Shown piece by piece: positions 12,864 to 59,230 of a stretch of 64,000 bases of DNA. The DNA lies in contig NC_068999.1 of the NCBI RefSeq assembly GCF_001194135.2, positions 7,598,168-7,662,167 on the forward strand, written 5' to 3'. Each line of letters opens with the position of its first letter. The stretch's first letter is position 1. Source of the stretch: Octopus bimaculoides (lineage: Eukaryota). Both the position numbers and the translations under genes were made by a program. The notes below the pieces were generated by a model. It saw only the letters and a program-made list of their open reading frames with translations, did no database searches and had not been told where the DNA came from.

Positions 12864-13868
12864 GTGAGTGTGTGTGTGTGTATGCATATATGCATATATT
12901 TATATATGTATTATATGTATGCATATATGCGTTTGTATCTATTACATATTGTGTATACATAAATACACACACACACACACATACGCACACACACATACAC
13001 ACACGCACACACACATATATATATGCAGCTGAAAGAGCTGCATGCACACATGTTAACGCATGCACATAAATGCTGGCATGCTTTTGTGAACGACTACATG
13101 AACAGCATGCACTAAAGTAAACACACGTAAGATTTTCTATTTGAATGCAAGCCGGACATAAATATAGATTTTACATAGAATTTCTCTATGAATGAGTAGA
13201 AATAGCAACATAAATTATGTTCCATTTCAAATGAATAGCTGCAATTGGCAGTTCCTGTTATACGAGATGACGAAATTGTGAAGAATTGACATTTTTGAAC
13301 AATTTTTGATTGTAGTTCTCTTGCAAACAGTGGCGCTATGTAATAGAGAAATATAATCGAGTGAACAAAAACATTCTCTTCGTGCTATTCAAGTACGGTT
13401 CGTACGTACGTATGGAAGCAGAAGTAGTTGCGTACATTTCAAGACACTTTCTTAGCGTTGTGGTTTCGGATTCAGACCCACTACGCCACAACTGGGGAAA
13501 TCCTCTTCTGCTCTAGTCTCGAATAATCGTAACAATGTAGAATGTAGATGCCTGTTCATCGTCAAGTTTTATTTATTCCTGCTGTATAATTTCATACATC
13601 ATATACTTATAGATGTTTGACCTACACGTGTTTCCACTGCACGTGGCAAGTGCATGTAGTTGCATGTGCAACTGCACAGGCATTTGCACATACAACGATC
13701 TAGTGATTCAGCAAAAGAATCGGGAGAATCCGTGTTAGGTTTAACAAAATTATGCTAGAAGACCATCTATGGTCTGACCACTAAGAAAAGATTGTACTCA
13801 AGAAAATTCAGCAAACGCCAGAACGTAAGCGAGCAAGACAAATGAAAAGATACAAAATATAAAGATAA

Positions 13869-13927
13869 ATCACAGACCGGTTTCGTTGTTACCACTTACG
13901 TAAATGTCCGTAACTCATCAGTGTAAT
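13869..13927 (-). ncRNA. Type I hammerhead ribozyme motif
   Basis: attaca-CTGATGA-gttac...gtaacaac-GAAA-ccgg-TC-tgtgat: 6-bp helix I, canonical core, long helix II, palindromic helix III, GUC cleavage triplet. Confidence 0.8.
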
Positions 13928-14194
13928 CGTCATAGCAATATAATTTGCAGACCTGTTTATGAGACGTCCGCATGAGATTGAACATGTATATAGTTCTACC
14001 AATTACATGTGGGTTTATATTTCGTCCACTTAGTGGTCATTCTTTTTATATGTATGTAATATAATTTTTGTGAATCTTCAGCTCTTTCAATATGCTAGGC
14101 GACTGGTTTTAAATTGATATTAATGAAATTAATATTCAATTTTTCACCCTTATTTAAATTTAAATATCTCTTCCGATATACGTATTCTTTTATT

Positions 14195-14348
14195 TGTTTC
14201 AGCCATTTGACTGCGACCCTGCTGGAGTACTGCTTTCAGTCGAACAAATCAACCCTAGGACTATAGAAGAAAACACTTGCGCAAGGTGCCACGCAGTGCG
14301 ACAGAACCCGGAACCATGTGGTTAGTAAGCAACCTACTTACCACACAG

Positions 14349-14351
<3 letters not shown>
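14195..14351. mobile_element. Adjacent SINE fragments (plus-strand 3' piece and minus-strand tRNA-like head)
   Basis: Minus head GTGGCTGTGTGGTAAG...GGTTCCGGGTTC at 14262-14351. Confidence 0.7.
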
Positions 14352-14436
<85 letters not shown>

Positions 14437-14824
14437 ACACAGATATGCTTATATGTATATTCAGCTTTGATAAGCAACGAATTCAAAAGGTACATTCGTT
14501 AAATATCATTGACTTTTGTAGTGAAAAATTCAAACACAAATATTTACTGGAATTACCAAGAAGAGAACGCGCTTCCTTCACAGAAAGCGTGTCTTAAAGA
14601 TTGATGATCCGATCAAGATAATTTCTAAACTATCGATCAAAATGTCAAAGTAGATTTCTCGATAGTCAATTGAAGGAAAACTAAAAGCATCCGACACTTA
14701 TGCTTTTTGAATAGAAACTACGAGAACTCGAGGCATTTTTTTGTTTAATTTACTTACGCCGTTATTTTATTTATTTAAGGTAAATTTAAGTCTGATGCAA
14801 TACGATGACCTATGGGGATGTTAA

Positions 14825-14865
14825 GCATATTGACGACTAGAACGATGACGACGATGTTGATGATA

Positions 14866-14897
<32 letters not shown>

Positions 14898-15064
14898 CAT
14901 GATGATGGTGATGACGTCGACATGACTGACGATAACGACGATTGTGATAATCGTGAGATGACAACGAAGATGCCGGTGATAATGATGATGATGACGATGA
15001 CGATGATGGTGATGACGATGACGATGATGATGATGACGATGATGATGACGATGATGATGATGAC

Positions 15065-15096
<32 letters not shown>

Positions 15097-15200
15097 CGAT
15101 GATGATGATGACGATGATGATGATGATGATGATAATGATGACGATGATGATGATGATGATGATGACGATGATGATGATGACGATGATGATGATGTTGTCT
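14825..15200. repeat. Compound (GAT/GAC)n trinucleotide tract
   Basis: Directly visible. Confidence 0.95.
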
Positions 15201-16239
15201 ACGACGATGGTATTCGTAATGTTAATAGCATTGTACTTTTAGTGTACAACAATGTGGGCTGTTTATCAATTTCAAATCTTACAGTGTTGTACAAGAAGCA
15301 AATATAATTATGTTATCTTCGATGCATTTCGTAGGAAGTATTTTGTTTCATGAAAGCATCATTTCCGGTTTTTTCTTTGAAGTCTGTCTGAAAACAAAGA
15401 TAGTTTGAAAGTTCGTAATAAGAATTTCCGGTGTATTTATGTTTTTTTTTTTCGCGATGGAAAGAAGCACTGAAATTTGGTAGAAGTTTCTTCTCTCGTT
15501 CGTAGCCAACTGGTGCAGAATAAAACTTTAGAACATATCTATAATTGTAGTATTGGATCATGTTTTAAATGTAGAATAGCATTTCTTGCGTTATTCCGCT
15601 GGTTGTCATTCACGAAATTTCCGTAGTATGTTCAGGAAATTTGTGAAACCATTGATACATTTTATTCTATACTTTTAATCGGAAGAAAGTCACAAAAGTG
15701 GGTCAAAGGCCGAGTATTTCAGCCACGGTTCTTCTCAAACTGACTTCATGACCGGTATCTCTGGTGAAAAGAAAATAGCTTTCGTTATTTTTATAGAAAT
15801 TTGTATTGCAGAGAATTTCATACGTGCTCCAGGCCAAACAAAGCCTTGTTAGTGGATGTAGAGGACGGAAACTGTATAGAAGTCGTGTCGTATATAAGTG
15901 TTCGTGGTTGTGCTTCATAAATTACATTGGTTTTTATTTAGGTCGCTGTAAACTTGTGACTCGGCGATAAAAAGCGTTAGAATAACAACTAGATTGTAAA
16001 TAAGTACTGGAGTGGAATTGTGTGATTAAAACCTTTAATATGATGCTCCAGAATGGCCAGAACGCAGTGACTGACAGAAGAAAAACATAAACGATTAAAG
16101 ATTAGAGTCAGAACTCCATATTCTGTGTGTTTTATTTAAGATGGCATGGTGTAAATTGAAAGGGATTTTGCTTGCTGCTTTTAACTGTTTAGACTTCAGC
16201 ATTGATGATCTCTCGTTGACATGTTATGGACAGTTTTAC

Positions 16240-16363
16240 CTCGTATGGAAAATCTGGTGTTCTATACGCCACCTTAGAATCTTCATTTTCGTTTCTGCTG
16301 TTGTCGATGTTGTTCATGTTGCTATTATTGCTGTCAGGAAAAAGATCGCTGAGCTGATAGAAT
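16240..16363 (-). CDS. Candidate exon (FYQLSDLFPDSNNSNMNNIDNSRNENEDSKVAYRTPDFPYE)
   Basis: Open frame, donor GAG|GTAAAA, tandem acceptors giving starts at 16363 or 16353. Could instead be decayed element sequence. Confidence 0.25.
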
Positions 16364-16752
16364 CTTTAGAATGCCTGGCCAAAATGCTTTGTGGGATTAT
16401 TCTTCCGTGCCTTTATGTTCTGTGTTTAAATATTGCTGAGGTCAGGTCAACTATTGTTTTCATTCTTACAGTATCGAACAAATGAAGGCAACGGTCATGA
16501 ACTGCGGTTGATATAATCGGTCAAAACCTAGCGTTTCTTTGCTTCAATATTGTTATAGACTGAACAATATTATGTTCAGTCTATAATATCCCATAAGATT
16601 CTGTAACAATAAGAGCGACAACGAAAACGACATAACAACAACAACAACAACAACAACAACAGCAGCAGTAGCAGCAACAACAAAAACAACAATAATAATA
16701 ATAAACCTTTCTACAAAACGCACAAGGCCTGAAATTTGTGGAGAGGGGACAG

Positions 16753-17029
16753 GTTAGTTCAGGAAGTTAAGCAGTTATAGCCGATAAAAATGGTAGCAGT
16801 AGTGCCAAAAATTTTCGGAGCCCTGAGAAGAGTGAAGAAAAATCTCGAGAAGTATTGTGGAAAAAATAGGGGCTGTAATAAAGGTAGAGCACTTGCAGAA
16901 AACAGCACTGCTTGGAACCACTCGAATACTCCGGAAGGTGCTCGAAAAATAAGAGGTCTTATGTTAGTTCACTGGTAGTGAACAGCTGACACCGTAGTAC
17001 ATCACCAGCGTTAGAAGCTGTGCAAAGGC

Positions 17030-17100
<71 letters not shown>
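16753..17100 (+). mobile_element. R4/Dong-like (RLE) non-LTR retrotransposon 3' end with (TAA)n tail
   Basis: Encodes ..VEHLQKTALLGTTRILRKVL; homologous to 17979-18250; ends TGTGCAAAGGC(AAT)n. Confidence 0.8.
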
Positions 17101-17218
17101 GCCTTTCTACTAAAGGCAGAAGGCCTGTTATTTTGGGGAGAGAACAAGTCGATCATATCGACTCTAGTGTTCCATTGGTACTCAATTTATCGTCCCCGTT
17201 AGGATGAAAGGTAAAGTC

Positions 17219-17220
<2 letters not shown>
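17101..17220 (-). mobile_element. SINE 3' half
   Basis: Reverse complement of GACTTT.CCTTTCATCCT...GATAAATT.AGTACCA...GTCGAT family seen at 30170-30375. Confidence 0.75.
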
Positions 17221-17271
<51 letters not shown>

Positions 17272-17689
17272 GAAGAAGAAGAAGAAGACGGAGAAGAAGA
17301 AGATAAAATTTCTGGAAGGAATCACTTCCTTCTCTAATCTCTATTCAAGTGAAAGTTAAAAATGTTCATGAAGGCTTGACCAAAGAGGAGAATATCTGTC
17401 TTCAGTATTGGCTTTGAAACTTCCGTAATCGTTGTGAATCAATAATTCATTCCTGTGTTTGATCAATTCTCCGATTTTGTTCAGTTGGAGAATTGGTGAT
17501 TTATTTTCTATTCCGTATAATACGGCTGCCACAAGCAAACAGATATCCTCTTCTGTTGGTACCACTTCTTCGTTAATTTAACCTTCGTCCGACCGAGGTT
17601 TGTCTGACAGAATTGGTGGAAGGAACGGTTCTGTCACCACGATGAACCCATGATGGCTATTTTTGGTGCCTTCTATTATATGTATCTGG

Positions 17690-17870
17690 GACGAATTGCT
17701 TAGTGGTACTTTGCTCGTCGATACATTCTGAGTTCAAATTCCGTCAAGGTCGACTTTGCCTTTCATCCTTTTCAGGGTCGATAAAATAAGTAACAGTTGA
17801 ATACAGGGGGTCGATATAATCAACACATTCTCTCACCGAAAATTGATGCCTTTTTGGAAAAATTTGAAAC
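17690..17870 (+). mobile_element. SINE (5'-truncated)
   Basis: TTCTGAGTTCAAATTCCG.CAAGGTCGACTTTGCCTTTCATCCTTT...GGGTCGATAAAATAAGTA. Confidence 0.8.
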
Positions 17871-17936
17871 TCTTCTTCTTCTTCTTCTTCTTCTTCTTCT
17901 TCTTCTTCTTCTTCTTCTTCTTCTTCTTCTTCTTCT

Positions 17937-17937
17937 C

Positions 17938-17969
<32 letters not shown>

Positions 17970-18440
17970 CATCATCATTTACTGTCTTTGCACAGCTCCT
18001 AATGCTGGAGATGTACTACAGTGCCAGCTGTTCACTACCACTGATCTAAGGTAGCACCCCCTTTTTTTTTTCGAGGCAATCCGGAGTATCCGAGCGGTCC
18101 CACGCAGTGCTGTTTTCTGCAAGTGCTCCACCCTTATTACAACCTCTATTTCTTCCTTGTACTTCGCAATATTTTTACTCACTGTTTCCACAGTTCCGAC
18201 AATTATTGATACTACTACTGCTACTACCTTTTTCATCGACCACAACTGCTTAACCTCCCAAGCTAACCTATCAAATCTATCGACATTTCTTTCTTCCTTA
18301 TCGCATACCTTGTTGTCACCTGGGCATACTACATCTATAATCCAGCATCGTTAGCTTTCTTTCTGAATTAACACTATGTCTGCTTTCCTATTCTTTATCT
18401 CATGGTCGCACTGAATCATAAATCCCAGAGGATCTTTGCA
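17937..18440 (-). mobile_element. R4/Dong-like non-LTR retrotransposon, RLE domain and 3' end with (TGA)n tail
   Basis: Minus translation IQCDHEIKNRKADIVLIQKES.RCWIIDVVCPGDNKVCDKEEE...LAWEVKQLWSMKKV...VEHLQKTALRGTARILR matches the PD-(D/E)xK restriction-like endonuclease C-terminus. Confidence 0.88.
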
Positions 18441-18490
18441 TTATCATTTTCAACGATGTCATAAAATCCTGTAGGATCTTTACATTATCA

Positions 18491-18540
<50 letters not shown>

Positions 18541-18785
18541 GTAGTAGTAGTAGTAGTAATAGTAGTAGTAATAGTAGCTTTACTTCTCGTAGCAATACTA
18601 GTTAATGCTGTATACAGTCAGAAGCTTAAGGCTTGCGGAAGAGTTTATGTAATCGAATGGTGTTACGTTCGTGGTTTTTATTTTGTCTTAAGATTATTTG
18701 AGTGTTTCGTGACCTAAGTGAAGTGAATTGAAAATGGCTAACAATTGGATATAGGGTCTTGGACTTGGCTTGGCACGAAGCTTAC

Positions 18786-18809
18786 CTCAGCTCTTCATAT
18801 TTCAACATA
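18786..18809 (-). CDS. Candidate 24-nt microexon (T ATG TTG AAA TAT GAA GAG CTG AG; MLKYEEL)
   Basis: Strong acceptor (ttttattatgtcctcccgtcag|) and donor (GAG|GTAAGC); open only in phase 2-2, compatible with the 16363 acceptor. Confidence 0.3.
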
Positions 18810-19040
18810 CTGACGGGAGGACATAATAAAATGATAGAAAACAAAGCTATACCGTAATAGTATAAGAAAACTAAATATAAACATGAAAAAAAAAGAAGAA
18901 AAATAGAAAAGACAGAAAAGAAACAAGCAAATCACTGAATCGGTTGAGAGATGTAAAATGTCAGTCAGAATTACTGCAATGTCTTATAGTGTTAACAAAT
19001 AACGTGAGATCGCATAGATTCCGCTGAAGATGAAGATTGA

Positions 19041-19067
19041 GGGTTGGGGTCTGGCGGGGGTGGGGGG
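19041..19067 (+). other. Putative G-quadruplex
   Basis: GGG-TT-GGGG-TCTGGC-GGGGG-T-GGGGGG. Confidence 0.6.
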
Positions 19068-19238
19068 ATGACGAGGAAGAAGAAATAAAGAGAAGAAGCA
19101 ACTTTCATAAATGAATTCCTTTAGAAAGTGTAAATGTGAGAAGGATTCTGTGAGAGAAAGAGAGAGAACGTTAACTCGCAATACGTACATACATACATAC
19201 ATACATCCATACATACATACATACACACATACATACAT

Positions 19239-19277
<39 letters not shown>

Positions 19278-19531
19278 AAACACTTATATAATATGATACA
19301 TATAATATATATTAATATGATATATATATATAATATGTATATAATTTATATAATATTATATAACACATATACATATATTACACTTATTCATATTATATCA
19401 CAAAGAGGGAAAGAGATTTCAGAAATAAACGCATACACACACACGCAAACTCTGTCTTTCTCTGTCTCTCTCACGCACACATGCACGCACGGAAACGCAC
19501 ACAGACACACACACACACACTCGTGTACAAG

Positions 19532-19584
<53 letters not shown>

Positions 19585-19589
19585 AACTG

Positions 19590-19633
<44 letters not shown>

Positions 19634-20514
19634 GAAGGTGGGTAAGGAATTTAAAAGAACGTGATAACGTGAAACGAAAAACCAAACAAACAAAAGAATT
19701 CTCCACACAACAATAACGACAATAGCATTGGAGATATAATATTGAGGGAAAAAAAAAACAACACAGAAAACCAAAAAAAAAAACAAACAAATAAAAAAAC
19801 AAAGAGAAAACGAAGAGAAAAACTATCAATAAATAAATACTCAAAGAAAGCAATAGACTTCATGGTTTTTATTTGTTCTGCTAAAATATTACTTTGCGAG
19901 ATATGCCAAACTATCGAATTGGTATTTATAGAACTGTTGGGGTTTCTTCGCCTTTTTCTACCTACTCTCGCTCTCTCTCTCGCTCTCTTTCCCTTTCTCT
20001 AAATGCTATTTATGTGTGTGTGAATGTGTGTGTAGTGTGTGTGAGGAAGTGAGAGAGGGAGAGATAGAGATGAAATGTAAGCAACGCCCGTCAGTAACAA
20101 CATAGAAATCAAAGAACATTGCACTTTAGAACATAGACAAAACACCGAAAACATTCTAGTGAGAGGCTTTGTCTGTTTTAATCTTCCACTTGACTGCTGC
20201 TTTACTTAATTGGCCACCGGATAGATTGACTGCAAAGTTGATCTTTGTGGAACTTGAAATCAGAAAGTAGTAGAAAAAATCCGATCAAATCCCGCAAAAG
20301 CAAATTTTTCCGACCAACTCTCGATCCATTGGCTTCTAACAAACCGTTAAAAATAAAAGCATAATTGAGGTATAATACGCGTTATTACTCTTTTAGTCTT
20401 TTACTAGTTTCAGTCATTTGACTGTGGCCATGCTGGCCAAAATGAAAAGCTCTACTTTCTATTTTGTCCCCTCTGTTTTCAGCCCTGTGTGGCCAATAAA
20501 GAAACATATCTATC

Positions 20515-20550
<36 letters not shown>

Positions 20551-21352
20551 TTTACTATAAGTGTGTTTATATGTGATAGTCTGTTTTTGAAACGCAAGCG
20601 CGTTACACTGTTAATATTATTCGAAAGTTAGTTTAATAATAATAAGTGAACATTCACTGGTGATGTAGTAAAATGAAATACATTACAAAGTGTTCATTGG
20701 AATATGAAGAGTCGCCAACGGCTTACTCTACAAACGTACGCAAACACGAGCTAATACATTAACCCATATACGTACACATAGGCGTTAGAATTTTGCAAAG
20801 CAACCATGCGCATATATATATANNNNNNNNNNNNNNNNNNNNNNNNNNNNNNNNNNNNNNNNNNNNNNNNNNNNNNNNNNNNNNNNNNNNNNNNNNNNNN
20901 NNNNNNNNNNNNNNNNNNNNNNNNNNNNNNNNNNNNNNNNNNNNNNNNNNNNNNNNNNNNNNNNNNNNNNNNNNNNNNNNNNNNNNNNNNNNNNNNNNNN
21001 NNNNNNNAAAGATAATTATTCATTAAATGACTTTCAATGAAAAATATTTTGCTCAGTCTAGAGAATATAAACTCTTTTAATTTCATGGTAGTCCAGTTGG
21101 CACACCATCGTAAGCACACACATGCACACACTCATACACACGCACGCACGCACACACACGCACACACACATACACACACACACACACACTCACACACACA
21201 CGCACATGCACTCAGAACACACACACACATGCACATGCACGCGGCTAACTAAGAATTCATTACAATAACCATTACACATCAAGTCTAATAAATAGCAGAA
21301 AGATATTTAGACAAAATGTGTCCAAGCTATCACTCTGCCTATCTGTCGTCCC

Positions 21353-21440
<88 letters not shown>

Positions 21441-22065
21441 GTCTATCTGTCTATATGTCTATCTAATTACCTACCTATCTATACAATTTCATATACGGGT
21501 GAAATACACGTTCGTGATGCTTGAGCACTTATAGACACGGTAGGAGATACAAACATGTTTTGCAAACTGATGTCCTTGTGGCAAGTAAATGCACTACAAT
21601 GATAGAAACGCTTCCATGTAATCCACCATTATGTCGGGGTTACAAAGTGTTGCACAGCTGAGCTTGTTCTGTTTCTATTGGTATGGTACCGCAACCATTT
21701 TAGATAGATAGACAGACCTAGGGTTATAGTAATTCTAAATAAATAGATAGAAAGATAGAAAAAGAAAGATAAATATATAGATAAATAGATAGTTAGATAT
21801 AAATAGGTAGGTATATAGATAGATAAATGGATAGATAGATAGATATATAGATAAATAGATAGATAGATAGATAGATGGATGGATAATCAGATATACTTTG
21901 GCGTACGATATAACTGGCTGCCATATTTAGTGTTAAGACAGAATTATAAAAAATTATATTTTCTACCGAGTACAATCCACTTAAAGCCGTTTTCTTCAAT
22001 CTCATTTACTTGGCTTAGATATCGATTCGCTCCGAGTACTAGTTTTTACACATATCTTTTTCCTA

Positions 22066-22142
<77 letters not shown>

Positions 22143-22480
22143 NNNNNNNNNNNNNNNNNNNNNNNNNNNNNNNNNNNNNNNNNNNNNNNNNNNNNNNNNN
22201 NNNNNNNNNNNNNNNNNNNNNNNNNNNNNNNNNNNNNNNNNNNNNNNNNNNNNNNNNNNNNNNNNNNNNNNNNNNNNNNNNNNNNNNNNNNNNNNNNNNN
22301 NNNNNNNNNNNNNNNNNNNNNNNNNNNNNNNNNNNNNNNNNNNNNNNNNNNNNNNNNNNNNNNNNNNNNNNNNNNNNNNNNNNNNNNNNNNNNNNNNNNN
22401 NNNNNNNNNNNNNNNNNNNNNNNNNNNNNNNNNNNNNNNNNNNNNNNNNNNNNNNNNNNNNNNNNNNNNNNNNNNNNNNN

Positions 22481-22526
<46 letters not shown>

Positions 22527-22889
22527 TGCAAATTTATCTGTATATGCAAATGTTTCCGTTACACACACTCACCCATACGCATACACAGAAGCAAATATAA
22601 TTGCTTGTATATGAATCCATATGTGATATTTCTTATACATGTGTCATAGCTAATTATTTGTGTTCTATTTATTAAGTTCTTACCTACAGACACAAAAGCA
22701 CATTCCCACACCCCAATGCGCACATGTAGCTCACCCCCACAGACAAAGATTGAGATGCGCACACACATACATATGTGCTTGAGTGTGTCGATAACTCGTG
22801 ATTCTGTTTAAGTTTATCTAAGTCGTACAAGTAACCGCCTTACCGTATATTTGACACATATACACATATCCACCTACTCAGCTCTATCA

Positions 22890-22953
<64 letters not shown>

Positions 22954-23017
22954 GTCTGTCTATCTGTTTGACTGTCTTTTTATCTATCTGTAGTGCATGT
23001 GTATATGTACATTTATG

Positions 23018-23063
<46 letters not shown>

Positions 23064-25196
23064 ATATATATATAATATATATGTACGTATAAATAAGTGC
23101 ATATAAGTATATTCCTTTCTGTCTATCTCTCCATTTCTCTATAAAAATGTGTACGTGCCTGTCTGTCTGTCTGTCTGTCTGTCGCTCTTTGTCTATCCCT
23201 CCAACTCTCTCTCTATTCCCATATCTATGTCGATATGTTTACAAATCGCACATCGTATTGATTTTCTTTTCTTTGGTTTTTTTTTTTTGTTTTCATACTC
23301 CTGTTTCATTGTTATCTGCACCATAATTATCAACATGATATCATTTTTGTTTAATTTCAAATTGCCTTTACACCTTAATCCTATCTGGAGATCTGAAGTG
23401 TTATAAAGGATCATTTTGTATGTGACAGTCATATCTATTTATATAATACGTATATGAATTAAAATCACTGTTTTTCTTTTTATTAACATTATGTTTCCCT
23501 TAACATTATTTTTTTTTATTGAGCAATGGCAAAACGATAATATCAAATTATTTTCTGAAATTCATCATAAAATCTTATTTGCCCATGATTGTAAGTAGTT
23601 TTAACTGAATAAATATTTAGCCTATAAAATTTAATATTAGAAAATAATGGAAGGATAAAAATATTGTTGGCAATTTGATGATATATCATAGAATTAATGT
23701 CTGAATATATCTGTTGAATTGCAATAATGTGGATCGTTTTTGTCATTTTAGACTTAAATTATGTATGTAGTTATTTTGACGAAATATCTCTACAGTAAAG
23801 GCGCCGAATTAATTGTTTAAATATATATTTTGTATTCTTATTGGTACACCATAATGTTGTCGGTTCAAGGTTTATAGCAGAGCAATAACAAGATTAATGC
23901 ATTTCTGATTGATAGGGACAAATCAAAGTTTGTGACACATTTGGAAAAGGGACTTCGTTTAAAGAGACACAACTTCTCGATTATTTCATTGATGTTTTGT
24001 AACCTTATTTGTGAGACATTTTCATTATGTTTAAATACATATATAAATAACATCCTCAATTGTACACACACAGACAGATATACAGACACACACACATCAC
24101 ACATACAGACACATACACACAAACGGACACACATACGGATATACGTACATGAACATACACACAGACTTGCTTATATACACACACATGCCTATATACAAAC
24201 ATATGCATGCATAAATACATAACGAACAGATGAATTCTGAGGTTTAACAGTTTTCTTGAATGCTCACAGAATTACGGCCTGGTTATTGCAATTATCGCCT
24301 GAAGATTTGCAATCAGGACTAATTAATAGTAATTAATACTCATTAATTTAATCTGAGTTTGATCACATATACGACAAAAAAAATCAAAAATAGCTTTGTG
24401 TATTAGCTACCCATGTCAATATTTCAGTTCAAATAACAGCAGAAGGAACTGCAAGAATTGTTTTCCAGACTTTAAGAAAAACGATATCAGCCTGTAATTG
24501 TTCTTGGCATTTTTTGTGGCCACATGATGATAAATCCGTCGGTGCACCAGCATGGCCAAAATCAAATGACTGAAATGAATAAAAGAACAAAAGAAAGAGT
24601 TGATATACTGTAATAAAGTGAAGGTGGCAGGCCAGAATGAACGAACTTATTTATAATTAAGGGAAAGCGAATTTAAGGGAAGGTATATACAACACACATA
24701 TTCTTTTCGACACCTCCGCTTTATTTCATGCTAGCGTATATGTTATATAGTTTAAATATATCAAGTCTATCTCATCAGACAACTTAACAGAAACGTCGTG
24801 CGCGTGCACATACATACATACATACATACGTACATATGTATATGAGTTTGCGTGTGNNNNNNNNNNATATATACATATACAGATGTGTATGTATATATAT
24901 ATATAAAATATATATACATATACAGATGTGCATGCATATATATGTGTATGAATGTATGTACGTATATATGGATGTATATATGTATGTACATATGTATGCA
25001 TGTATGTATGTACGTATGTATTTCGTATGCTTATATGTATTAAAAAATAAGAAGAATGGTTTTAAAACTGAGCTAATCTTTATATATATAAATATATCTG
25101 AATAAGACACGTCATATTGCTTTAACATACGAGGTAAATATTTCTTATTATTTCTCTCCCTCTTTCTGTCTCTTTCTTTCTTTCTTTCTTTCTTTG

Positions 25197-25245
<49 letters not shown>

Positions 25246-25280
25246 CTCTGATTTTCTCTCTCTCTCTCTCTGTGCGTGTG

Positions 25281-25312
<32 letters not shown>

Positions 25313-25763
25313 TATATATGAGAGTGAGAGGGAGAGTAAAAGTACAAATATGTTTTCGCCTAACAAATGTTTTCAGATAATAGATTTACTGTAAAATATT
25401 AGTGTATGTTCATACAAGATAAGTTCATACAAGATAAGTTTTACACAACACAAACACAGCCACATATATTGAAAGAATGTCACAGATTACTGAGACGTAT
25501 AAAAGAAGTTTTACTGAACAAAATTTGATGTATGACGTAGGCCAAACGATGTTTTGTTGTGGAACAAACATCATATATTACTGATTGACTGGAATCGCTT
25601 TACTAACGTTTAAGATGTGCTTTTTCAATGTGTTTTCAGGCATTGACTGTCGTCGTGTACTTACAATAATCATTTCCAGCACATATACATATATTACAGC
25701 GAGGTTTCTGTTTAATTGCTTTGGTGCTCTCTCTCTCTCTTTCTCTCTGTCTCTGTCTCTGTC

Positions 25764-25856
<93 letters not shown>

Positions 25857-26056
25857 GTAAATGTCGAACAATGAGGATGAGTGCTCAGCACAGTATTGGT
25901 GGATAACATTTCTTTATTTTTGTATTAAGGCTAGCATTGGTTTTATGTTACGAAAAATATCTTAATATCTTAACACTTTTTCAAGCCGATCGCGTGGAGG
26001 AATCATGTTCGTCTCGATTTTGAAGACGAACACCCTAAACAGATAGGAAGATAGAC

Positions 26057-26122
<66 letters not shown>

Positions 26123-52354: not shown

Positions 52355-52396
52355 TACAGAGAAAGAGAAAGAGAGAGAGAGAGAGANNNNNNNNNN

Positions 52397-52431
<35 letters not shown>

Positions 52432-52908
52432 GAGAGAAAGAGAGATACCAGCTGAAGAGCCGGCCTATTCAATTTTTACAATAGAATATCTTATATAATT
52501 TTTTTATTTATTCCATATCAGACACAATTGCGCAATTTTTCGACAAAAAATTTCTTTGAGGATTTTTTGCCTTTTAAAATGCTTTCCTTTCGTTTGTTTA
52601 ATAAAAATTCCTCCTCCTAATCATTTTGCTTTCATTTCTTAATAGACAGCTCTCATGCAGAAAATGCCAGCTCTCATGCAAAACATGGCTGCTTCCAAAT
52701 CCTGTTTTTTGATAAAGGTAAAATTGATTAAACTTTAAACCTCAGTAACATTTTTCTGCAATTTTTCTGGATCAAATAAATAGCAAAATCGGTTTTGAAC
52801 GTCGAAAATTATTTCAATATACTAATTTGGAAATTGTGACATAATTTTAAAATCTATAAATGTGTGTATAGGTGTATGTACATGTATATGCATAATGAGA
52901 GAAAGAGG

Positions 52909-52965
<57 letters not shown>

Positions 52966-53940
52966 ATGTGTGTGTATGTATGTGTTTGGATTTGTGTCTC
53001 AGTGTCTACACCCTTGTAACGTAATAATCCGGGAAAAGAATAGACACAGACTAAGTACCAGATTTAAAAAGGCAACTTAAATAGAAAAGTACAGTACTGT
53101 TTTGCGTCGCTTTGTACGGACTAATCCCTTCTAGGCGCTGATCACATCCAGGTCGCAATCCAGTGACCGAGTGAAACAGAAGAATAAAAATTATATGCAA
53201 GGATAAAAGGATAAATTTCAAATTGAAGGTTACTGGTATAAGAAATTCCCATCTTAATAACAACATCTCATTTACGAACATTAGAAGACATAATAAATAA
53301 TATGTTTACTAAAAGATCTGTGATGATTTTAAACGTTGTACAGCTAACAAACGAGGCAATAAACTCTATTCAGCTAACGATAAAGCTACACATATGAGTA
53401 GCGCTTATATTTATTTATTGTTATAACATACTTAAAATCTATGCATTTATGGTAGTATATGTCGCAAAGGAATTGTTATATTTCTGAAAACATTCTTTAT
53501 AGATGAAGGTCATATTTTCTACTTCAGTGGAAAGTTAATCTCTGTGTGAGATGTGTTGAATATTTATAATTATTGTTCTTTAAGTATCTTCTCATTTTGT
53601 CCTTTCATTAACATCCTCTATACAGTAGCTTTGTCTCGTGCCCCCTACTTCTTCTTTGTATATAGCATTCTATATTAGCTAATTATACTATTACTGCGGT
53701 TCCACCATCACATCCTCCCCCTCCTCCTCCTCTTCTTTCTACTATAGCCACAAGAGCGGTAATTTTTGAAGGAGGGTGTGAGTCGATACATCGACCCCAG
53801 TGCGTAACTAGTACTTATTTTATCGACAAAACAACCACAAACACCAGTTCATATACACACACACATACACGCACACGCACAGAGGCACAGACAAAAAGGC
53901 CCACACTCGTAAACTGCATACACAGACACACAGAGGCACA

Positions 53941-54020
53941 CACACTTATGTACTGCGCGCACACACACACTTATGTACTGCGCGCACACACACACTTATG
54001 TACTGCGCGCACACACACAC
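53941..54020. repeat. 25-bp tandem repeat x3 (CACTTATGTACTGCGCGCACACACA)
   Basis: Directly visible. Confidence 0.92.
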
Positions 54021-54721
54021 GCGTATAAGAGGGCATTCTCAAAAGTCCCTTCTACCCAATCACCGCCAATGCATCAGGCATCCCAACGCTTTGGTAGCAT
54101 TCACTTTCCCAAGGTGCAATACAATGGGACTGATCCAAAACACGTGTTTGCGAAGCGAACTGCTTAATCACATACCCGTTCCTACAGGTGATTTTGTGAC
54201 TATTTCTAGCATGTCAAGAAACCACACACGTAAACGCACACACATAAAGGCACTTTCACTGTAAGCATCTATCGATTTATATATTTCAAATAAACAACTT
54301 GCGTACATTCTGTTCTCTAATAAAATTGTAAAATGCATTTCAGTGAGTTTAAGCCAAGATTTCAACTACATCTTTAAATGTCGAACACAAAGAACTTTCA
54401 ACATTACAAATCTGGCAACTAATGGCTTCTCCTGTCCTCCCTCCTTTACTCTCACACAGCCTTATCTTCTCTTCGATATTCTTCCACTTTATCGTGGTGC
54501 GTTAATTCAGAGATGTCGTCAAGGCTAAATTGGATGCCTTTACATATCAAATGCAACATCAATTTCCATCTAGATTACATATAGTGTATTTATCAACACG
54601 TTTAGTGAACCTATCAGCTTTCAATAAAGTTTGTTAGCTTCACTTTTCGTAGAACTAATATTTTACAATGTTTTCAAAAGACAGAAAGATATCTCTCGTT
54701 CATAAACTCATATACTTTCTT

Positions 54722-54811
<90 letters not shown>

Positions 54812-55822
54812 CTTCTCTCCCTCTTCAACTATCTCTCCCTCTCTCATATATATACATATATGAACATACGTGTAGGTATTGGTATATACATATGCATATA
54901 TATATGTATATATATATATATATATNNNNNNNNNNNNNNNNNNNNNNNNNNNNNNNNNNNNNNNNNNNNNNNNNNNNNNNNNNNNNNNNNNNNNNNNNNN
55001 NNNNNNNNNNNNNNNNNNNNNNNNNNNNNNNNNNNNNNNNNNNNNNNNNNNNNNNNNNNNNNNNNNNNNNNNNNNNNNNNNNNNNNNNNNNNNNNNNNNN
55101 NNNNNNNNNNNNNNNNNNNNNNNNNNNNNNNNNNNNNNNNNNNNNNNNNNNNNNNNNNNNNNNNNNNNNNNNNNNNNNNNNNNNNNNNNNNNNNNNNNNN
55201 NNNNNNNNNNNNNNNNNNNNNNNNNNNNNNNNNNNNNNNNNNNNNNNNNNNNNNNNNNNNNNNNNNNNNNNNNNNNNNNNNNNNNNNNNNNNNNNNNNNN
55301 NNNNNNNNNNNNNNNNNNNNNNNNNNNNNNNNNNNNNNNNNNNNNNNNNNNNNNNNNNNNNNNNNNNNNNNNNNNNNNNNNNNNNNNNNNNNNNNNNNNN
55401 NNNNNNNNNNNNNNNNNNNNNNNNNNNNNNNNNNNNNNNNNNNNNNNNNNNNNNNNNNNNNNNNNNNNNNNNNNNNNNNNNNNNNNNNNNNNNNNNNNNN
55501 NNNNNNNNNNNNNNNGTTGTCTTCTTATGCAGAGTTTGACCACCTCCACCACCTACACCTTAGAAGCATCGTGGCATCTGATGTAGCTTTATAAAGTAGA
55601 CAATGTTTCGAAAATACATTCACACAGATTGCATATTCGATTTGGACCACCTGGTATTACCTCAGTATGGAGGGTCATTTTTATAAGGTGTACGGTAGTA
55701 GGTAATTTAAAAGGTAAAACCGTGGTTTAATATATATAAAAAACGATAAGAAATGGAGCAATAATAACAATTAGAAGTGAATCATTGGAGTTTTAAAGTC
55801 ATTTATTAAAGGTGAGAGTATG

Positions 55823-55898
55823 CTTACAGCTGTTTCAGTATATATTCTGGGGTAAATTTACATTTACCTCGTTGCAATTGATAGACATCATCAGAAGG
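55823..55898 (-). ncRNA. Hammerhead-like motif with branched helix II (degenerate helix I)
   Basis: cctt-CTGATGA-tgtctat...GGTAAAT-gtaa-ATTTACC...atatact-GAAA-cagctg-TA-ag; shares GAAACAGCTGTA with the 50111 copy. Confidence 0.55.
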
Positions 55899-56169
55899 AT
55901 TATATGGCAAAGATAAAATAGAAGGAGAATAGAAAGATGTAGGGAAAGGAAAGGAAAATAAGTAATGTTAATTCAATGGTCTTACATTTTGTGAGGTATT
56001 TCATTCAATATATCATTTAGAAGATAGAAGAGGAGTTAGTTTAATCCAATGTGTTATAATTAATTAGTTTCATAATTGCACTTGTCGAAGGCTCTAACAT
56101 CTGGTGGTAGTGGCTAGTTGACCGCCGGTGTAACCCGAGGGAGTTATCGCTATTGGGGATATCCGGTGT

Positions 56170-56468
56170 AGTTAATTGGACCTATGTGACACAAAAAAGA
56201 CGTCAGGAGGTAGCCAACGTGAGATGAAGAGATCAAGGAAGAGGAAGACGACAATTATTCACGTAGTAATTGGTTCAAGTGGTACATCGCCCAAAAGGCT
56301 AGCAAAGAAGCTGGAGGATATTGGGATTGAAACACGACGGTCAACCTGCAGGAAGACTCAATCTTGTGCTCTGCAAGTATCTTAATGAACATTCTCGATA
56401 TTCTTAGGAGACTTGTCACCAAACTCCAGAATATTATCTCTTCAAATTAAATTATCATGTAATGGCTT

Positions 56469-56545
<77 letters not shown>
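56170..56545 (+). mobile_element. R4/Dong-like RLE retrotransposon 3' end (distinct subfamily) with (AAT)n tail
   Basis: EMKRSRKRKTTIIHVVIGSSGTSPKRLAKKLEDIGIET resembles the E...LW....VVPIVIGALG.....L...L..LGI motif; followed by (AAT)n. Confidence 0.7.
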
Positions 56546-56546
<1 letters not shown>

Positions 56547-57377
56547 GTATCATGCCCACTGTGGGCATGATATTACGTTATATAGTGTTACATCGACATA
56601 AAATACTCTTAGAAATAGAGAGAAACCATTTAGGGAATGGAATGTCTATCAGCGTGATTTAATGAAATATCAGTACATGTTATTTGAGTTTATAGGGAAA
56701 ATAATTATAAATTGGAAATAAATTGAATATAATATGTTATATTACTTATTCATAGAATATGTATACAGTAAACCCATGGATCGTATGACGTGGACTAATA
56801 AATTGTTGAACAAATTAATTTTGGTCCGGGAAAGAGTCCGATACGTATAAGACGTGAAAAATGGAGTAGAAACTATATTGCTTCATGTAAAAAGTATTGA
56901 TATATATATTTCACNNNNNNNNNNNNNNNNNNNNNNNNNNNNNNNNNNNNNNNNNNNNNNNNNNNNNNNNNNNNNNNNNNNNNNNNNNNNNNNNNNNNNN
57001 NNNNNNNNNNNNNNNNNNNNNNNNNNNNNNNNNNNNNNNNNNNNNNNNNNNNNNNNNNNNNNNNNNNNNNNNNNNNNNNNNNNNNNNNNNNNNNNNNNNN
57101 NNNNNNNNNNNNNNNNNNNNNNNNNNNNNNNNNNNNNNNNNNNNNNNNNNNNNNNNNNNNNNNNNNNNNNNNNNNNNNNNNNNNNNNNNNNNNNNNNNNN
57201 NNNNNNNNNNNNNNNNNNNNNNNNNNNNNNNNNNNNNNNNNNNNNNNNNNNNNNNNNNNNNNNNNNNNNNNNNNNNNNNNNNNNNNNNNNNNNNNNNNNN
57301 NNNNNNNNNNNNNNNNNNNNNNNNNNNNNNNNNNNNNNNNNNNNNNNNNNNNNNNNNNNNNNNNNNNNNNNNNNNNN

Positions 57378-57411
<34 letters not shown>

Positions 57412-57709
57412 GTGGGAGATAATTTATGTGTGCTTGCATGTATGTATGGATGCATCTATGCATGTATGTATGTATGTATTTATGTATTAGGCAATGAGTA
57501 AGGAAACCAGGCAAAAAGTTAGTTGCATGTTTCAATAAATGTTTCAGTGGTTTAATGTTTATATATGCGTATGTATGTGTTTGTGTTAGGTCTTTGATTT
57601 TGTGTATGTATACAAGCATATATGCACATGTGTATGTAGTTTCTTAGTGTAGGGGCTTCTGTCTAACCGCTCATACATACACATACACACACCCACCCAC
57701 ACATATATA

Positions 57710-57966
57710 TGACGACTGCCTTGTTTAAGTCTCCGCCTGCCAAATCCATACAAAAGACTTTCTAGAAGAAACCATCCAAAGGCACACGAAGATGGACTGA
57801 ACCGAGAACCATGTGGTTGGGATTCAAGCTTGTTAACATACAAAAACAACTGCGCCTATAGAATTATATCCATATTCTCTTTATATTCCACATTGAACAC
57901 GGTTTCGGAACCCGAAACCGTGTTGTTGGTAAGCAAGCTACTTACGACACAGCCACTCCTGCGCCT
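57710..57966 (-). mobile_element. Two SINE fragments
   Basis: Minus heads ...AACCACATGGTTCTCGGTTCAGTCC and GTGGCTGTGTCGTAAGTAGCTTGC...GGTTTCGGGTTCC. Confidence 0.65.
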
Positions 57967-58052
57967 ATATCTACATATATATGTAGACACACACACAATC
58001 CGTTTCCGTTCTGCTGCAATGTTTGTGTTTCTAAGTATAACTGCACTCATCC

Positions 58053-58104
<52 letters not shown>

Positions 58105-58505
58105 CTTGGTATGTCATTCTGCCCATACAACTGTCTCTCCCACATCCCTCTCTCACACACGTACACACCTAACCTTTACTATACACGTTGGACAATTAAA
58201 CGAATCCGATATTAACGCAACTTATAACACAAAGCAAGCAAAGATCAACGCACACAACCTTTCACTCATCCAGACAAATTATTTACAGCTGAGCTAGTTA
58301 AACAAATATTTATGTTGCAGTAACAGAACAGTTGATTTTGACAAGCTCGTTCAACATTAAGGCAATTCCTCGTGTGGTTCAGAAAATTGTTTTCAATTGA
58401 AAACTCAACAGAGTATTTAACGTATGGCATAACGTCTTCAAAGTCTGCACATTTTTGTTACGTCTCCAACGTCAGCAGTTTTATACACTTCTATCCTTCT
58501 CGATA

Positions 58506-58830
58506 GAGGAGGCGCAATGGCCCAGTGGTTAGGGCAGCGGACTCGCGGTCGGAGGATCACGGTTTCGATTCCCAGACCGGGCGTTGTGTGTGCTTATTGA
58601 GCGAAAACACCTAAAGCTCCAAAAGGCTCCGACAGGGGCTGGTGGCGACCCCTGTTGTACTCTTTCGTCCCAACTTTCTCTCACTTTTTCTTCCTGTTTC
58701 TTGAGTAACGCTGCGATGGACTGGCATCCCATCCAGCTGGGGGGGAATACATACGCCATAGAAACCGAGAAACCGGGCCCGTGATCCTGGCTAGGCATGA
58801 AAAGGGCGCATAAATAAATAAAAATAATCT
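58506..58830 (+). mobile_element. Full-length tRNA-derived SINE with A-rich tail
   Basis: TGGCCCAGTGGTTAGGGCAGCGGACTCGCGG...GGTTTCGATTCCC head; CTGCGATGGACTGGCATCCCATCCAG central block; (TAAA)n tail. Confidence 0.9.
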
Positions 58831-58856
58831 TTCTCGATATACGAAGTCCAAATTGT

Positions 58857-58900
58857 GGAGGGGCAATGGCCCAGTGGTTAGGGCAGCGGACTCACGGTGG
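58857..58900 (+). mobile_element. Isolated duplicate of the preceding SINE's 5' head
   Basis: GGAGG(G)GCAATGGCCCAGTGGTTAGGGCAGCGGACTC(A)CGGT is nearly identical to about 58506-58550. Confidence 0.8.
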
Positions 58901-59187
58901 GTAAATGTGTGTAAATACTGCATCGCAAACACTCATATGAACACACATACGTATACACACACACGCACAGATGCACATAAAAATACATACTTATGCACAC
59001 AGGCATGCACACACACACACATATCTTTTATTATTTACTTTTTCAATAAGGAAACGTTAATCACGCCTGAAAAACCGCCTGAGCATGTTTTAGTCAAATT
59101 GGCACTTATTCTGTCGACTATTTTTCTCGAACCGCTAAGTTACCGTTACCAAAACAAATCTGAGCTACATAATTAGAACTAATCTAC

Positions 59188-59230
59188 TCCAGACTGATGA
59201 AAAGTAGTAGCTCTGAAACTAGTCTCTGGA
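59188..59230 (+). ncRNA. Minimal type I hammerhead ribozyme
   Basis: TCCAGA-CTGATGA-aaag-tagtag-ctct-GAAA-ctag-TC-TCTGGA: perfect 6-bp helix I, canonical core, palindromic helix III, GUC triplet; one mismatch in helix II. Confidence 0.85.

What the first reader, a model, noticed from the sequence alone, without database searches (positions are those of the whole stretch)
13869..59230. At least eight hammerhead-ribozyme-like motifs in 46 kb: a dispersed, multi-family self-cleaving retroelement system
Type I hammerhead architectures (helix I / CUGANGA or CCGAUGA / helix II / GAAA / short helix III / NUH / helix I) occur at 13869(-), 34055(-), 35039(+), 38259(-), 46644(-), 50111(+), 55823(-) and 59188(+). 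Each has complementary helix I arms, which chance core matches would usually lack. Flanks and helix II differ, implying several families. Established: Penelope-like elements and retrozymes carry minimal type I hammerheads with palindromic helix III. Inference: this genome hosts a dense set of non-autonomous ribozyme-bearing retroelements that may produce self-cleaved or circular RNAs. None of this appears in the ORF track.
Basis: partly seen in the sequence, partly recalled or inferred. Interest (0 to 1): 0.88.

Follow-up and report, generated by a model that had tools for sequence, protein, structure and literature searches.

The report
Five dispersed hammerhead-like motifs, probably relics
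Five of the eight sites carry the hammerhead ribozyme signature far more often than chance allows, but they look like scattered, probably inactive leftovers of ribozyme-bearing retroelements of a kind already known in animals.

Summary
Counts of the CUGANGA box alone match chance, and no Rfam hammerhead model reaches its threshold. The best match is 23.6 bits against a threshold of 48.5, at site 1.

A structure-aware descriptor gives a different picture. It requires exact CUGANGA and GAAA boxes, a short palindromic or hairpin helix III, U16.1, H17 and helix I.
- With helix I of 5 bp or more it finds 3 motifs (13868-13928-, 46644-46706-, 59188-59230+). Permuted-core decoys and shuffles give about 0.025.
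- With helix I of 2 bp or more it finds 5 motifs (adding 35042-35098+ and 55823-55896-), against 0.31 expected.
- All five also carry C15.2-G16.2, which the descriptor did not require. That pair occurs in 10% of decoy hits.

Sites 34.1k and 38.3k have C at invariant U4 and are not separable from chance. Site 50.1k has no GAAA box.

None of the five has a canonical helix II. The hammerhead fold is not favoured for sites 1 and 8. Flanks share no similarity. There are no tandem arrays and no RT or GIY-YIG reading frames.

The most likely reading is solo relics of Penelope-like-element or retrozyme-type hammerheads. Circular-RNA production is unsupported. This is a new member of a known kind, of modest interest.

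The parts
13868..13928 (-). Layout: GAUUACA / CUGAUGA / 30-nt helix II domain / GAA / ACCGGU / C / UGUGAUU. Predicted cleavage is 3' of C at 13875.
   Evidence: Helix I is 7 bp, including 2 G-U pairs. Helix III is a 6-nt palindrome, C15.2-G16.2 is present and the triplet is GUC. G10.1-C11.1 is present, but only 3 bp sit flush against the core. Rfam Hammerhead_3 scores 23.6 bits against a gathering score of 48.5.
46644..46706 (-). Layout: UGGGAU / CUGACGA / 31-nt helix II domain / GAA / ACCUAAGGU / A / AUCUCA. Predicted cleavage is 3' of A at 46650.
   Evidence: Helix I is 6 bp. Helix III is 3 bp plus a triloop, or 4+1+4 as a palindrome. The triplet is GUA. Helix II is a 6-bp stem offset from the core by 2 nt on the 5' side and 5 nt on the 3' side. 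Rfam gives no hammerhead hit.
59188..59230 (+). Layout: UCCAGA / CUGAUGA / AAAGUAGUAGCUCU / GAA / ACUAGU / C / UCUGGA. Predicted cleavage is 3' of C at 59224.
   Evidence: Helix I is 6 Watson-Crick bp. Helix III is 1 bp plus the palindromic tetraloop CUAG. The triplet is GUC. Helix II reads A-U, A.C mismatch, A-U, G-C, U.G, with loop AGUA. Rfam gives no hammerhead hit, even in a 101-nt search.
35042..35098 (+). Layout: GA / CUGAAGA / 33-nt helix II domain / GAA / ACGAUUCGU / A / UC.
   Evidence: Both boxes are exact, C15.2-G16.2 is present and the triplet is GUA. Helix I is only 2 bp. There is a U.U mismatch at the base of helix II. The motif lies 64 nt from gap 35163.
55823..55896 (-). Layout: UU / CUGAUGA / 51-nt helix II domain / GAA / ACAGCUGU / A / AG.
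   Evidence: Both boxes are exact, helix III is an 8-nt palindrome, C15.2-G16.2 is present and the triplet is GUA. Helix I is only 2 bp. The helix II hairpin lies far from the core.
38259..38294 (-). Layout: CGU / CCGAUGA / ACGGGAACGU / GAA / ACUCAGAGU / A / ACG.
   Evidence: It has C at invariant U4. It does have GAAAC...GUA and a 3-bp helix III. It is one of 2 hits among 18 one-mismatch core descriptors, where I estimate about 0.5 by chance. No Rfam hit. It sits between (TA)n runs, 29 nt from gap 38324.
34057..34096 (-). Layout: CCA / CCGAUGA / G+GUCACA-GAAG-UGUGAC / GAA / AGAACU / C / UGG.
   Evidence: This is the only site with the helix II typical of Penelope-like elements: a bulged nucleotide, G10.1-C11.1 and 6 bp. 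It has C at U4, a non-palindromic helix III and a 3-bp helix I. The expected number of such one-mismatch hits is about 1 per window. No Rfam hit.
50116..50122 (+). A lone CUGACGA box.
   Evidence: There is no GAAA within 60 nt downstream. No Rfam hit.

Best explanation
The window is a gappy, microsatellite-rich animal genome. Its SINEs look cephalopod to me, from memory only. It holds five dispersed copies of the metazoan type I hammerhead signature that are unrelated to one another in sequence.

Each copy has exact CUGANGA and GAAA boxes, the C15.2-G16.2 pair, a GUC or GUA cleavage triplet and a short (near-)palindromic helix III. Helix I is 6-7 bp in three copies and 2 bp in two.

I take them to be solo remnants of hammerhead-bearing retroelements. 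The candidates are Penelope-like-element flanking repeats or their non-autonomous retrozyme derivatives, left by truncated insertions.

Mechanism of the parent motif, from established knowledge and not shown here:
- In the transcript the core catalyses transesterification 3' of H17, giving 2',3'-cyclic phosphate and 5'-OH ends.
- Helix III is only 1-3 bp, so two copies must pair through the palindrome to form an active dimer.

Inferred for these particular copies: each has an irregular helix II, no partner copy nearby and a disfavoured hammerhead fold. Most are therefore inactive or barely active relics rather than working ribozymes.
For: - Architecture against chance. With helix I >=5 bp there are 3 hits, against a decoy mean of 0.024, a shuffle mean of 0.025 and 0 in the reversed window. 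By my Poisson arithmetic the probability is about 3e-6.
- With helix I >=2 bp there are 5 hits against 0.31, and no decoy descriptor reaches 5.
- With a strictly palindromic helix III there are 2 hits against 0.005-0.006.
- An independent feature that the descriptor did not require: C15.2-G16.2 occurs in 5 of 5 motifs with helix I >=2 bp and in 0 of 3 hits with no helix I. It occurs in 10.1% of 6123 decoy hits. GAAAC makes up 17% of GAAAN in the window. The GAAAC/GUC consensus can be seen in Rfam's own model line.
- Exact-core motifs (5) outnumber one-mismatch-core motifs (at most 2).
- Literature match. Animal type I hammerheads have a 6-bp helix I and a 1-2 bp helix III with a small palindromic loop, and they act as dimers. 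Minimal variants from Penelope-like elements occur mostly as solo, highly heterogeneous copies with low activity in vitro (PMC4209133; PMC7229834). A U.U mismatch at the base of helix II is described in axolotl retrozymes.
Against: - No Rfam hammerhead model reaches gathering score. Site 1 scores 23.6 against 48.5. Sites 3, 5, 7 and 8 get nothing at E<=10 in short searches.
- No motif with an exact core has a helix II of >=4 bp flush against A9 and G12. Only site 1 has G10.1-C11.1.
- The hammerhead fold scores -1.4 against an MFE of -11.8 kcal/mol for site 1, +1.7 against -9.0 for site 8 and -7.5 against -9.6 for site 5. Folding z-scores are unremarkable.
- There is no RT, GIY-YIG or other retroelement domain of that kind in 404 open segments. 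There are no tandem arrays. Flanks share no similarity.
- I wrote the descriptors after seeing the candidates, so the nominal probabilities are optimistic.
- No second sequence from this genome could be obtained to replicate the result.
Confidence: 0.6

Rival explanations
1. All eight sites are chance matches. Short degenerate boxes plus a few complementary bases will occur in 58 kb of AT-rich DNA, and both the reader and my descriptor were tuned onto them.
For: - Box counts are at chance.
- The simple core-only descriptor CUGANGA-N7-17-GAAA gives 3 hits against 1.6.
- Rfam is negative.
- Folds are poor.
- The descriptors were post hoc.
Against: - There are 3 hits against 0.025 and 5 against 0.31, under three different nulls.
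- C15.2-G16.2 occurs in 5 of 5, a feature that was not selected for.
- The three hits without that pair and with no helix I match the chance expectation of 1.7.

This rival does hold for sites 2, 4 and 6.
Confidence: 0.1
2. One reading: an active, dense system of non-autonomous ribozyme-bearing retroelements whose transcripts self-cleave and circularise.
For: - The motif excess.
- Cores are better preserved than a neutral relic population would suggest, 5 exact against at most 2 with one mismatch.
- Animal retrozymes and elements derived from Penelope-like elements do this elsewhere (PMC7229834; bioRxiv 10.64898/2026.07.22.740005).
Against: - There are no tandem copies or nearby partners for dimer formation.
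- Helix II is irregular in all five motifs.
- The hammerhead fold is disfavoured.
- No repeated families occur in the window.
- There is no expression evidence of any kind.
Confidence: 0.15
3. The motifs at sites 1 and 8 are box C/D snoRNA-like elements, with UGAUGA as the C box, CUGA as the D box and a terminal stem, rather than hammerheads.
For: Rfam gives weak C/D-box matches over the cores: DdR5 at 17.9 bits, snoR128 at 17.2, snoTBR5 at 12.4 and sR3 at 11.5.
Against: - All scores are far below gathering scores (40-70 bits).
- At site 8 the C and D boxes are 12 nt apart, leaving no room for a guide, and 8 nt separate the D box from the stem.
- This reading does not explain GAAAC...GUH or the palindromic helix III.
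Confidence: 0.02

Closest known systems
Canonical metazoan type I hammerheads of newt/axolotl satellite 2 and non-LTR retrozymes (PMC7229834)
   Same: - Open helix I of 6 bp.
- Exact core boxes and a GUC/GUA site.
- Helix III of a single or a few bp capped by a palindromic loop, which implies action as a dimer.
- AT-rich host sequence.
- Site 8 also has a helix II domain of canonical size (14 nt). A U.U mismatch at the base of helix II, as in sites 3 and 7, is reported for one axolotl family.
   Different: - There are no 170-400 bp tandem repeats.
- Each copy is a singleton with unrelated flanks.
- Helix II is mismatched or offset from the core.
- No loop-loop contacts could be recognised.
- Rfam Hammerhead_1/3 models do not reach threshold.
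Minimal hammerheads in the flanking repeats of Penelope-like elements (Cervera and de la Pena 2014, PMC4209133)
   Same: - Dispersed, mostly solo copies.
- Extreme sequence heterogeneity with preserved boxes.
- Palindromic 15.2-16.2 and loop 3.
- Weak predicted activity.
   Different: - The defining helix II is absent from all five supported motifs. That helix is 6-8 bp, with a bulged nucleotide after A9 and G10.1-C11.1.
- It is present only at site 2, whose core is mutated.
- Helix I here is longer, at 6-7 bp in three copies.
- No RT/GIY-YIG reading frame lies nearby.
Rfam Hammerhead_3 (RF00008), type III
   Same: Site 1 can also be drawn as type III, using an upstream GGUC at 13950. Both boxes align to the model.
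   Different: - The score is 23.6 bits against a gathering score of 48.5.
- Helices I and III carry mismatches in that register.
- The type I register gives a 7-bp helix I.

Membership tests
Hammerhead ribozyme (any type) | Invariant core box C3-U4-G5-A6-N7-G8-A9 | tested here: met
   The box is exact at sites 1, 3, 5, 7 and 8. It is not met at sites 2 and 4, which read CCGAUGA. Site 6 has the box only.
Hammerhead ribozyme (any type) | G12-A13-A14, the A15.1-U16.1 pair, and H17 not G at the cleavage site | tested here: met
   Met at sites 1, 3, 5, 7 and 8, and also at site 4. C15.2-G16.2 is present in 5 of 5. Site 6 has no GAAA.
Hammerhead ribozyme (any type) | Three helices abutting the core, including a helix II paired directly next to A9 and G12 | tested here: not met
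   Helices I and III are present. Helix II flush against the core is 3 bp at site 1 and 0-1 bp at sites 3, 5, 7 and 8. Stems exist but are offset by internal loops.
Hammerhead ribozyme (any type) | Match to a curated covariance model at its gathering score (Rfam hammerhead clan CL00010) | tested here: not met
   The whole window gives 0 hits. Site 1 scores 23.6 against 48.5 bits. The other sites have no hammerhead match at E<=10.
Hammerhead ribozyme (any type) | Site-specific self-cleavage | not testable with these tools
   This needs in vitro transcription of monomer and dimer constructs.
Minimal hammerhead of Penelope-like elements | Location in direct repeats flanking an RT plus GIY-YIG reading frame | tested here: not met
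   A Pfam scan of 404 open segments of >=45 aa over the whole window finds no RVT or GIY-YIG domain. The literature says most genomic copies are solo, so this does not exclude descent from such an element.
Minimal hammerhead of Penelope-like elements | [quoted passage not shown] | tested here: not met
   Absent from the five supported motifs. Present only at site 2, which has C at U4.
Minimal hammerhead of Penelope-like elements | Palindromic 15.2-16.2 and loop 3 | tested here: met
   The helix III elements are ACCGGU, ACUAGU, ACAGCUGU, ACCU-A-AGGU and ACGA-U-UCGU.
Minimal hammerhead of Penelope-like elements | Genome-wide consensus families with compensatory changes | not testable with these tools
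   Only one 64-kb window is available. No other DNA from this genome could be fetched.
Animal non-LTR retrozyme | Head-to-tail tandem repeats of about 170-400 bp, each with a type I hammerhead | tested here: not met
   TRF and the repeat search find no such arrays around any site. Gaps beside sites 3, 4 and 7 could hide collapsed arrays.
Animal non-LTR retrozyme | Expression as linear and circular RNAs of unit length | not testable with these tools
   No transcript data are available.

The most novel reading that the evidence does not exclude
This genome, possibly a cephalopod's, for which I found no published hammerhead survey, may carry on the order of 10^5 copies of a hammerhead variant class. 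Five copies in 58.5 kb of read sequence is about 85 per Mb. The class would have an irregular or offset helix II that Rfam models and standard descriptors miss. The cores would be under constraint, given 5 exact against at most 2 with one mismatch, and the motifs would be active as dimers or with host factors.
Probability: 0.12. Interest if true: 0.6.

Novelty: new member of a known kind. Interest (0 to 1): 0.35.

Why it matters
If the excess holds genome-wide, it adds another animal lineage to those whose genomes are peppered with hammerhead motifs derived from retroelements. The density here would be high.

It would also repeat a known puzzle for minimal hammerheads of Penelope-like elements: catalytic boxes and helices I and III are preserved in copies that share no other sequence.

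It is a practical warning as well. Curated covariance models miss these motifs entirely, while box-only searches cannot tell them from chance. Only a structure-aware descriptor with permuted-core decoys separated them.

It does not by itself show any ribozyme activity or any circular RNA.

Tried and rejected
- **Rfam.** I ran gathering and E-value modes on the whole window and on short stretches around all eight sites. Only one sub-threshold hammerhead hit appeared. The whole-window E-value list is swamped by microsatellite 'miRNA' look-alikes.
- **Flank families.** blastn and local alignment of +/-200-300 nt flanks found nothing above the shuffled score.
- **Retroelement proteins.** The Pfam screen of 404 open segments found no RT or GIY-YIG domain.
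- **Insertion into microsatellites.** Sites 2, 4 and 8 sit between like microsatellites. So do 24% of all unique segments, and the median unique segment is 194 nt. This is not informative.
- **Tandem or dimeric arrangement.** None was found. Upstream of site 1 there is a second GGUCUG box (13953-13948) and a loose core pair at 14081. Both are within chance expectation.
- **Helix II-based descriptor in the Penelope-like style.** It gives no exact-core hit. One-mismatch hits, including site 2, are near expectation.
- **More DNA from the same genome, or the organism's name.** Exact-protein look-ups failed. A homology search gave a single uninformative hit. Two metagenome scans, with the site 8 motif and with the SINE core, found nothing.
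- **Supplementary hammerhead alignments for an independent model.** None are held as text.
- **C/D snoRNA reading.** Rejected on box spacing.

Full report
**What the window is.** It holds 64 kb of AT-rich DNA (about 35% G+C) with 16 runs of N and no tRNA genes. It has 161 microsatellite or gap blocks, and the median unique stretch is 194 nt. It also contains copies of a tRNA-derived SINE, a Tc1/mariner HTH fragment and LINE-like open pieces. This is an animal genome draft. The SINE looks to me like the abundant octopus SINE, but that is memory and not a test. Attempts to name the organism failed.

**Gaps first.** Twelve gaps, not six, lie inside 13869-59230. None interrupts any of the eight motifs. 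The closest are 29 nt from site 4 and 64 nt from site 3. Spacing between motifs is therefore uncertain, but each motif was read from continuous sequence.

**The observation, site by site.**
- Site 1 (13868-13928, -): GAUUACA / CUGAUGA / 30 nt / GAA / ACCGGU / C / UGUGAUU.
- Site 5 (46644-46706, -): UGGGAU / CUGACGA / 31 nt / GAA / ACCUAAGGU / A / AUCUCA.
- Site 8 (59188-59230, +): UCCAGA / CUGAUGA / AAAGUAGUAGCUCU / GAA / ACUAGU / C / UCUGGA.
- These three have both invariant boxes, a 6-7 bp helix I starting at positions 1.1/2.1, a short palindromic helix III and a GUC or GUA triplet.
Their helix III elements are ACGAUUCGU and ACAGCUGU, and their helix I is only 2 bp.
- Sites 2 and 4 read CCGAUGA, with C at the invariant U4.
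- Site 6 has no GAAA within 60 nt and is not a hammerhead.

**Is it more than chance?**
- The box alone is not. There are 23 CUGANGA against 25.8 +/- 5.1 in dinucleotide shuffles, and 33 C[CU]GANGA against 35.9.
- A core-only descriptor from the literature (CUGANGA-N7-17-GAAA) gives 3 against 1.6.
- The architecture is. I required exact boxes 6-60 nt apart, a helix III that is a 4-8 nt perfect palindrome or a hairpin of >=3 bp, U16.1, H17 and a contiguous helix I.
- With helix I >=5 bp the window gives 3 hits. The same descriptor with 3600 permuted cores run on the real sequence gives a mean of 0.024. A set of 1000 shuffles gives 0.025, and the reversed window gives 0.
- With helix I >=2 bp there are 5 hits against 0.31, and no decoy reaches 5. 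With no helix I requirement there are 8 against 1.7.
- With a strictly palindromic helix III there are 2 hits against 0.005-0.006.
- These descriptors were fixed after I had seen the candidates, so the nominal probabilities are generous.

**An independent check.** The pair next to A15.1-U16.1 was not part of the descriptor. It is C-G, the natural hammerhead consensus GAAAC...GUH that is visible in Rfam's own model line. It is C-G in all five motifs with helix I >=2 bp and in none of the three hits with no helix I. Among 6123 decoy hits it is C-G in 10.1%, and GAAAC is 17% of GAAAN in the window. The three hits lacking it match the chance expectation of 1.7. I conclude that five motifs are real descendants or instances of the hammerhead pattern.

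**What speaks against working ribozymes.**
- No Rfam hammerhead model reaches its gathering score anywhere. Site 1 gets 23.6 bits against 48.5, drawn as type III with an upstream GGUC. Sites 2-8 get no hammerhead match at E<=10 in searches of 0.1-3.7 kb.
- No exact-core motif has a helix II of >=4 bp flush against A9 and G12.
- The stems that do exist are offset by internal loops, begin with U.U or U.G, or contain an A.C mismatch. Only site 1 has G10.1-C11.1.
- The hammerhead-type fold scores -1.4 against an MFE of -11.8 kcal/mol for site 1, +1.7 against -9.0 for site 8 and -7.5 against -9.6 for site 5. Folding z-scores are ordinary.

**Context.**
- Flanks of the sites share no similarity with one another or with anything else in the window.
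- There are no tandem arrays or nearby partner copies.
- Pfam finds no reverse transcriptase or GIY-YIG domain in any of 404 open segments.
- Sites 2, 4 and 8 lie between like microsatellites, which recalls the target preference of Penelope-like elements (PMC8557442). However, 24% of all unique segments do the same, so this is not evidence.

**Comparison with the literature.**
- Cervera and de la Pena (PMC4209133) describe animal type I hammerheads with a 6-bp helix I, a 4-bp helix II and a 1-2 bp helix III capped by a small palindromic loop. These work as dimers.
- They also describe minimal variants in Penelope-like-element repeats. Those have a 6-8 bp helix II, a bulged nucleotide after A9, G10.1-C11.1 and a palindromic 15.2-16.2. 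They are extremely heterogeneous, mostly solo and barely active in vitro.
- The five motifs here share the helix I and helix III architecture, the heterogeneity and the solo state. They do not share the helix II of either class.
- Non-LTR retrozymes (PMC7229834) require tandem repeats, which are absent here.
- I found no paper on hammerheads in cephalopods.

**Verdict.** There is a real excess of hammerhead-type motifs of the retroelement-associated kind. An active self-cleaving or circular-RNA system is not shown, and the structural evidence leans against it for these copies.

The best reading is solo relics of hammerhead-bearing retroelements (confidence about 0.6). Unexplained points:
- Exact cores (5) outnumber one-mismatch cores (at most 2) even though the flanks are unrelated.
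- All five motifs share the lack of a canonical helix II.

This is a new member of a known kind, and interest is modest.

Noticed in passing
window 33152-33732, 35163-35576, 38324-38686, 52387-52396, 54926-55515, 56915-57377 (and 740-797, 1565-1958, 8649-9470, 60316-60996): There are more assembly gaps than the program's note listed: 16 in the window and 12 inside the finding. Those I inspected abut microsatellites, so the assembly appears to break at simple repeats. Collapsed tandem arrays next to sites 3, 4 and 7 cannot be excluded.
   Followed up: partly
window 14150-14345(-), 38040-38225(+), 38687-38870(-); fragments 57786-57814, 15800-15920: These are copies of a tRNA-derived SINE ending in (TA)n, about 77% alike. 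From memory it resembles the abundant octopus SINE. The organism was not verified.
   Followed up: partly
window 58510-58800(+) and 58866-58900(+): A second tRNA-like SINE head (GGCGCAATGGCCCAGTGGTTAGGGCAGCGGACTC...) appears once at full length and once as a 35-nt fragment, about 400 nt upstream of motif 8.
   Followed up: no
window 50665-51012(-): An open segment matches the Tc1/mariner transposase HTH domain (Pfam HTH_Tnp_Tc3_2, 30.6 bits, cut-off 31.5). It is probably a decayed DNA transposon.
   Followed up: partly
window 46865-47555(-) and 48878-49264(-): By eye these open pieces resemble the end of an AP-endonuclease domain and the C-terminal part of a non-LTR retrotransposon ORF2. Pfam is silent and a homology search gave one weak hit. 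Motif 5 lies about 160 nt downstream of the first piece, on the same strand.
   Followed up: partly
window 4000-6200 and 10070-10920: These are long polypyrimidine/polypurine tracts of the (CT)n type with extreme GC and AT skew. They produce long spurious 'SLSLSL' reading frames.
   Followed up: no
window 13945-13962(-) and 14007-14087(-): Upstream of motif 1 on the same strand there is a second AAACAGGUCUG box resembling the motif's GAAACCGGUCUG. There is also a loose CUGAAGA...GAAA pair without helices I or III. This could be the remains of a second copy, or it could be chance.
   Followed up: partly
window 59176-59218(+), 13836-13926(-): Rfam gives weak box C/D snoRNA matches over the hammerhead cores, because CUGAUGA contains the C box and CUGA is the D box. 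These are look-alikes and are worth remembering when screening such motifs.
   Followed up: yes
whole window: The Rfam E-value search is dominated by about 250 sub-threshold 'microRNA' matches (mir-297, mir-3149, mir-466 and others). All of them are (TA)n, (TG)n or (TATG)n microsatellites.
   Followed up: yes
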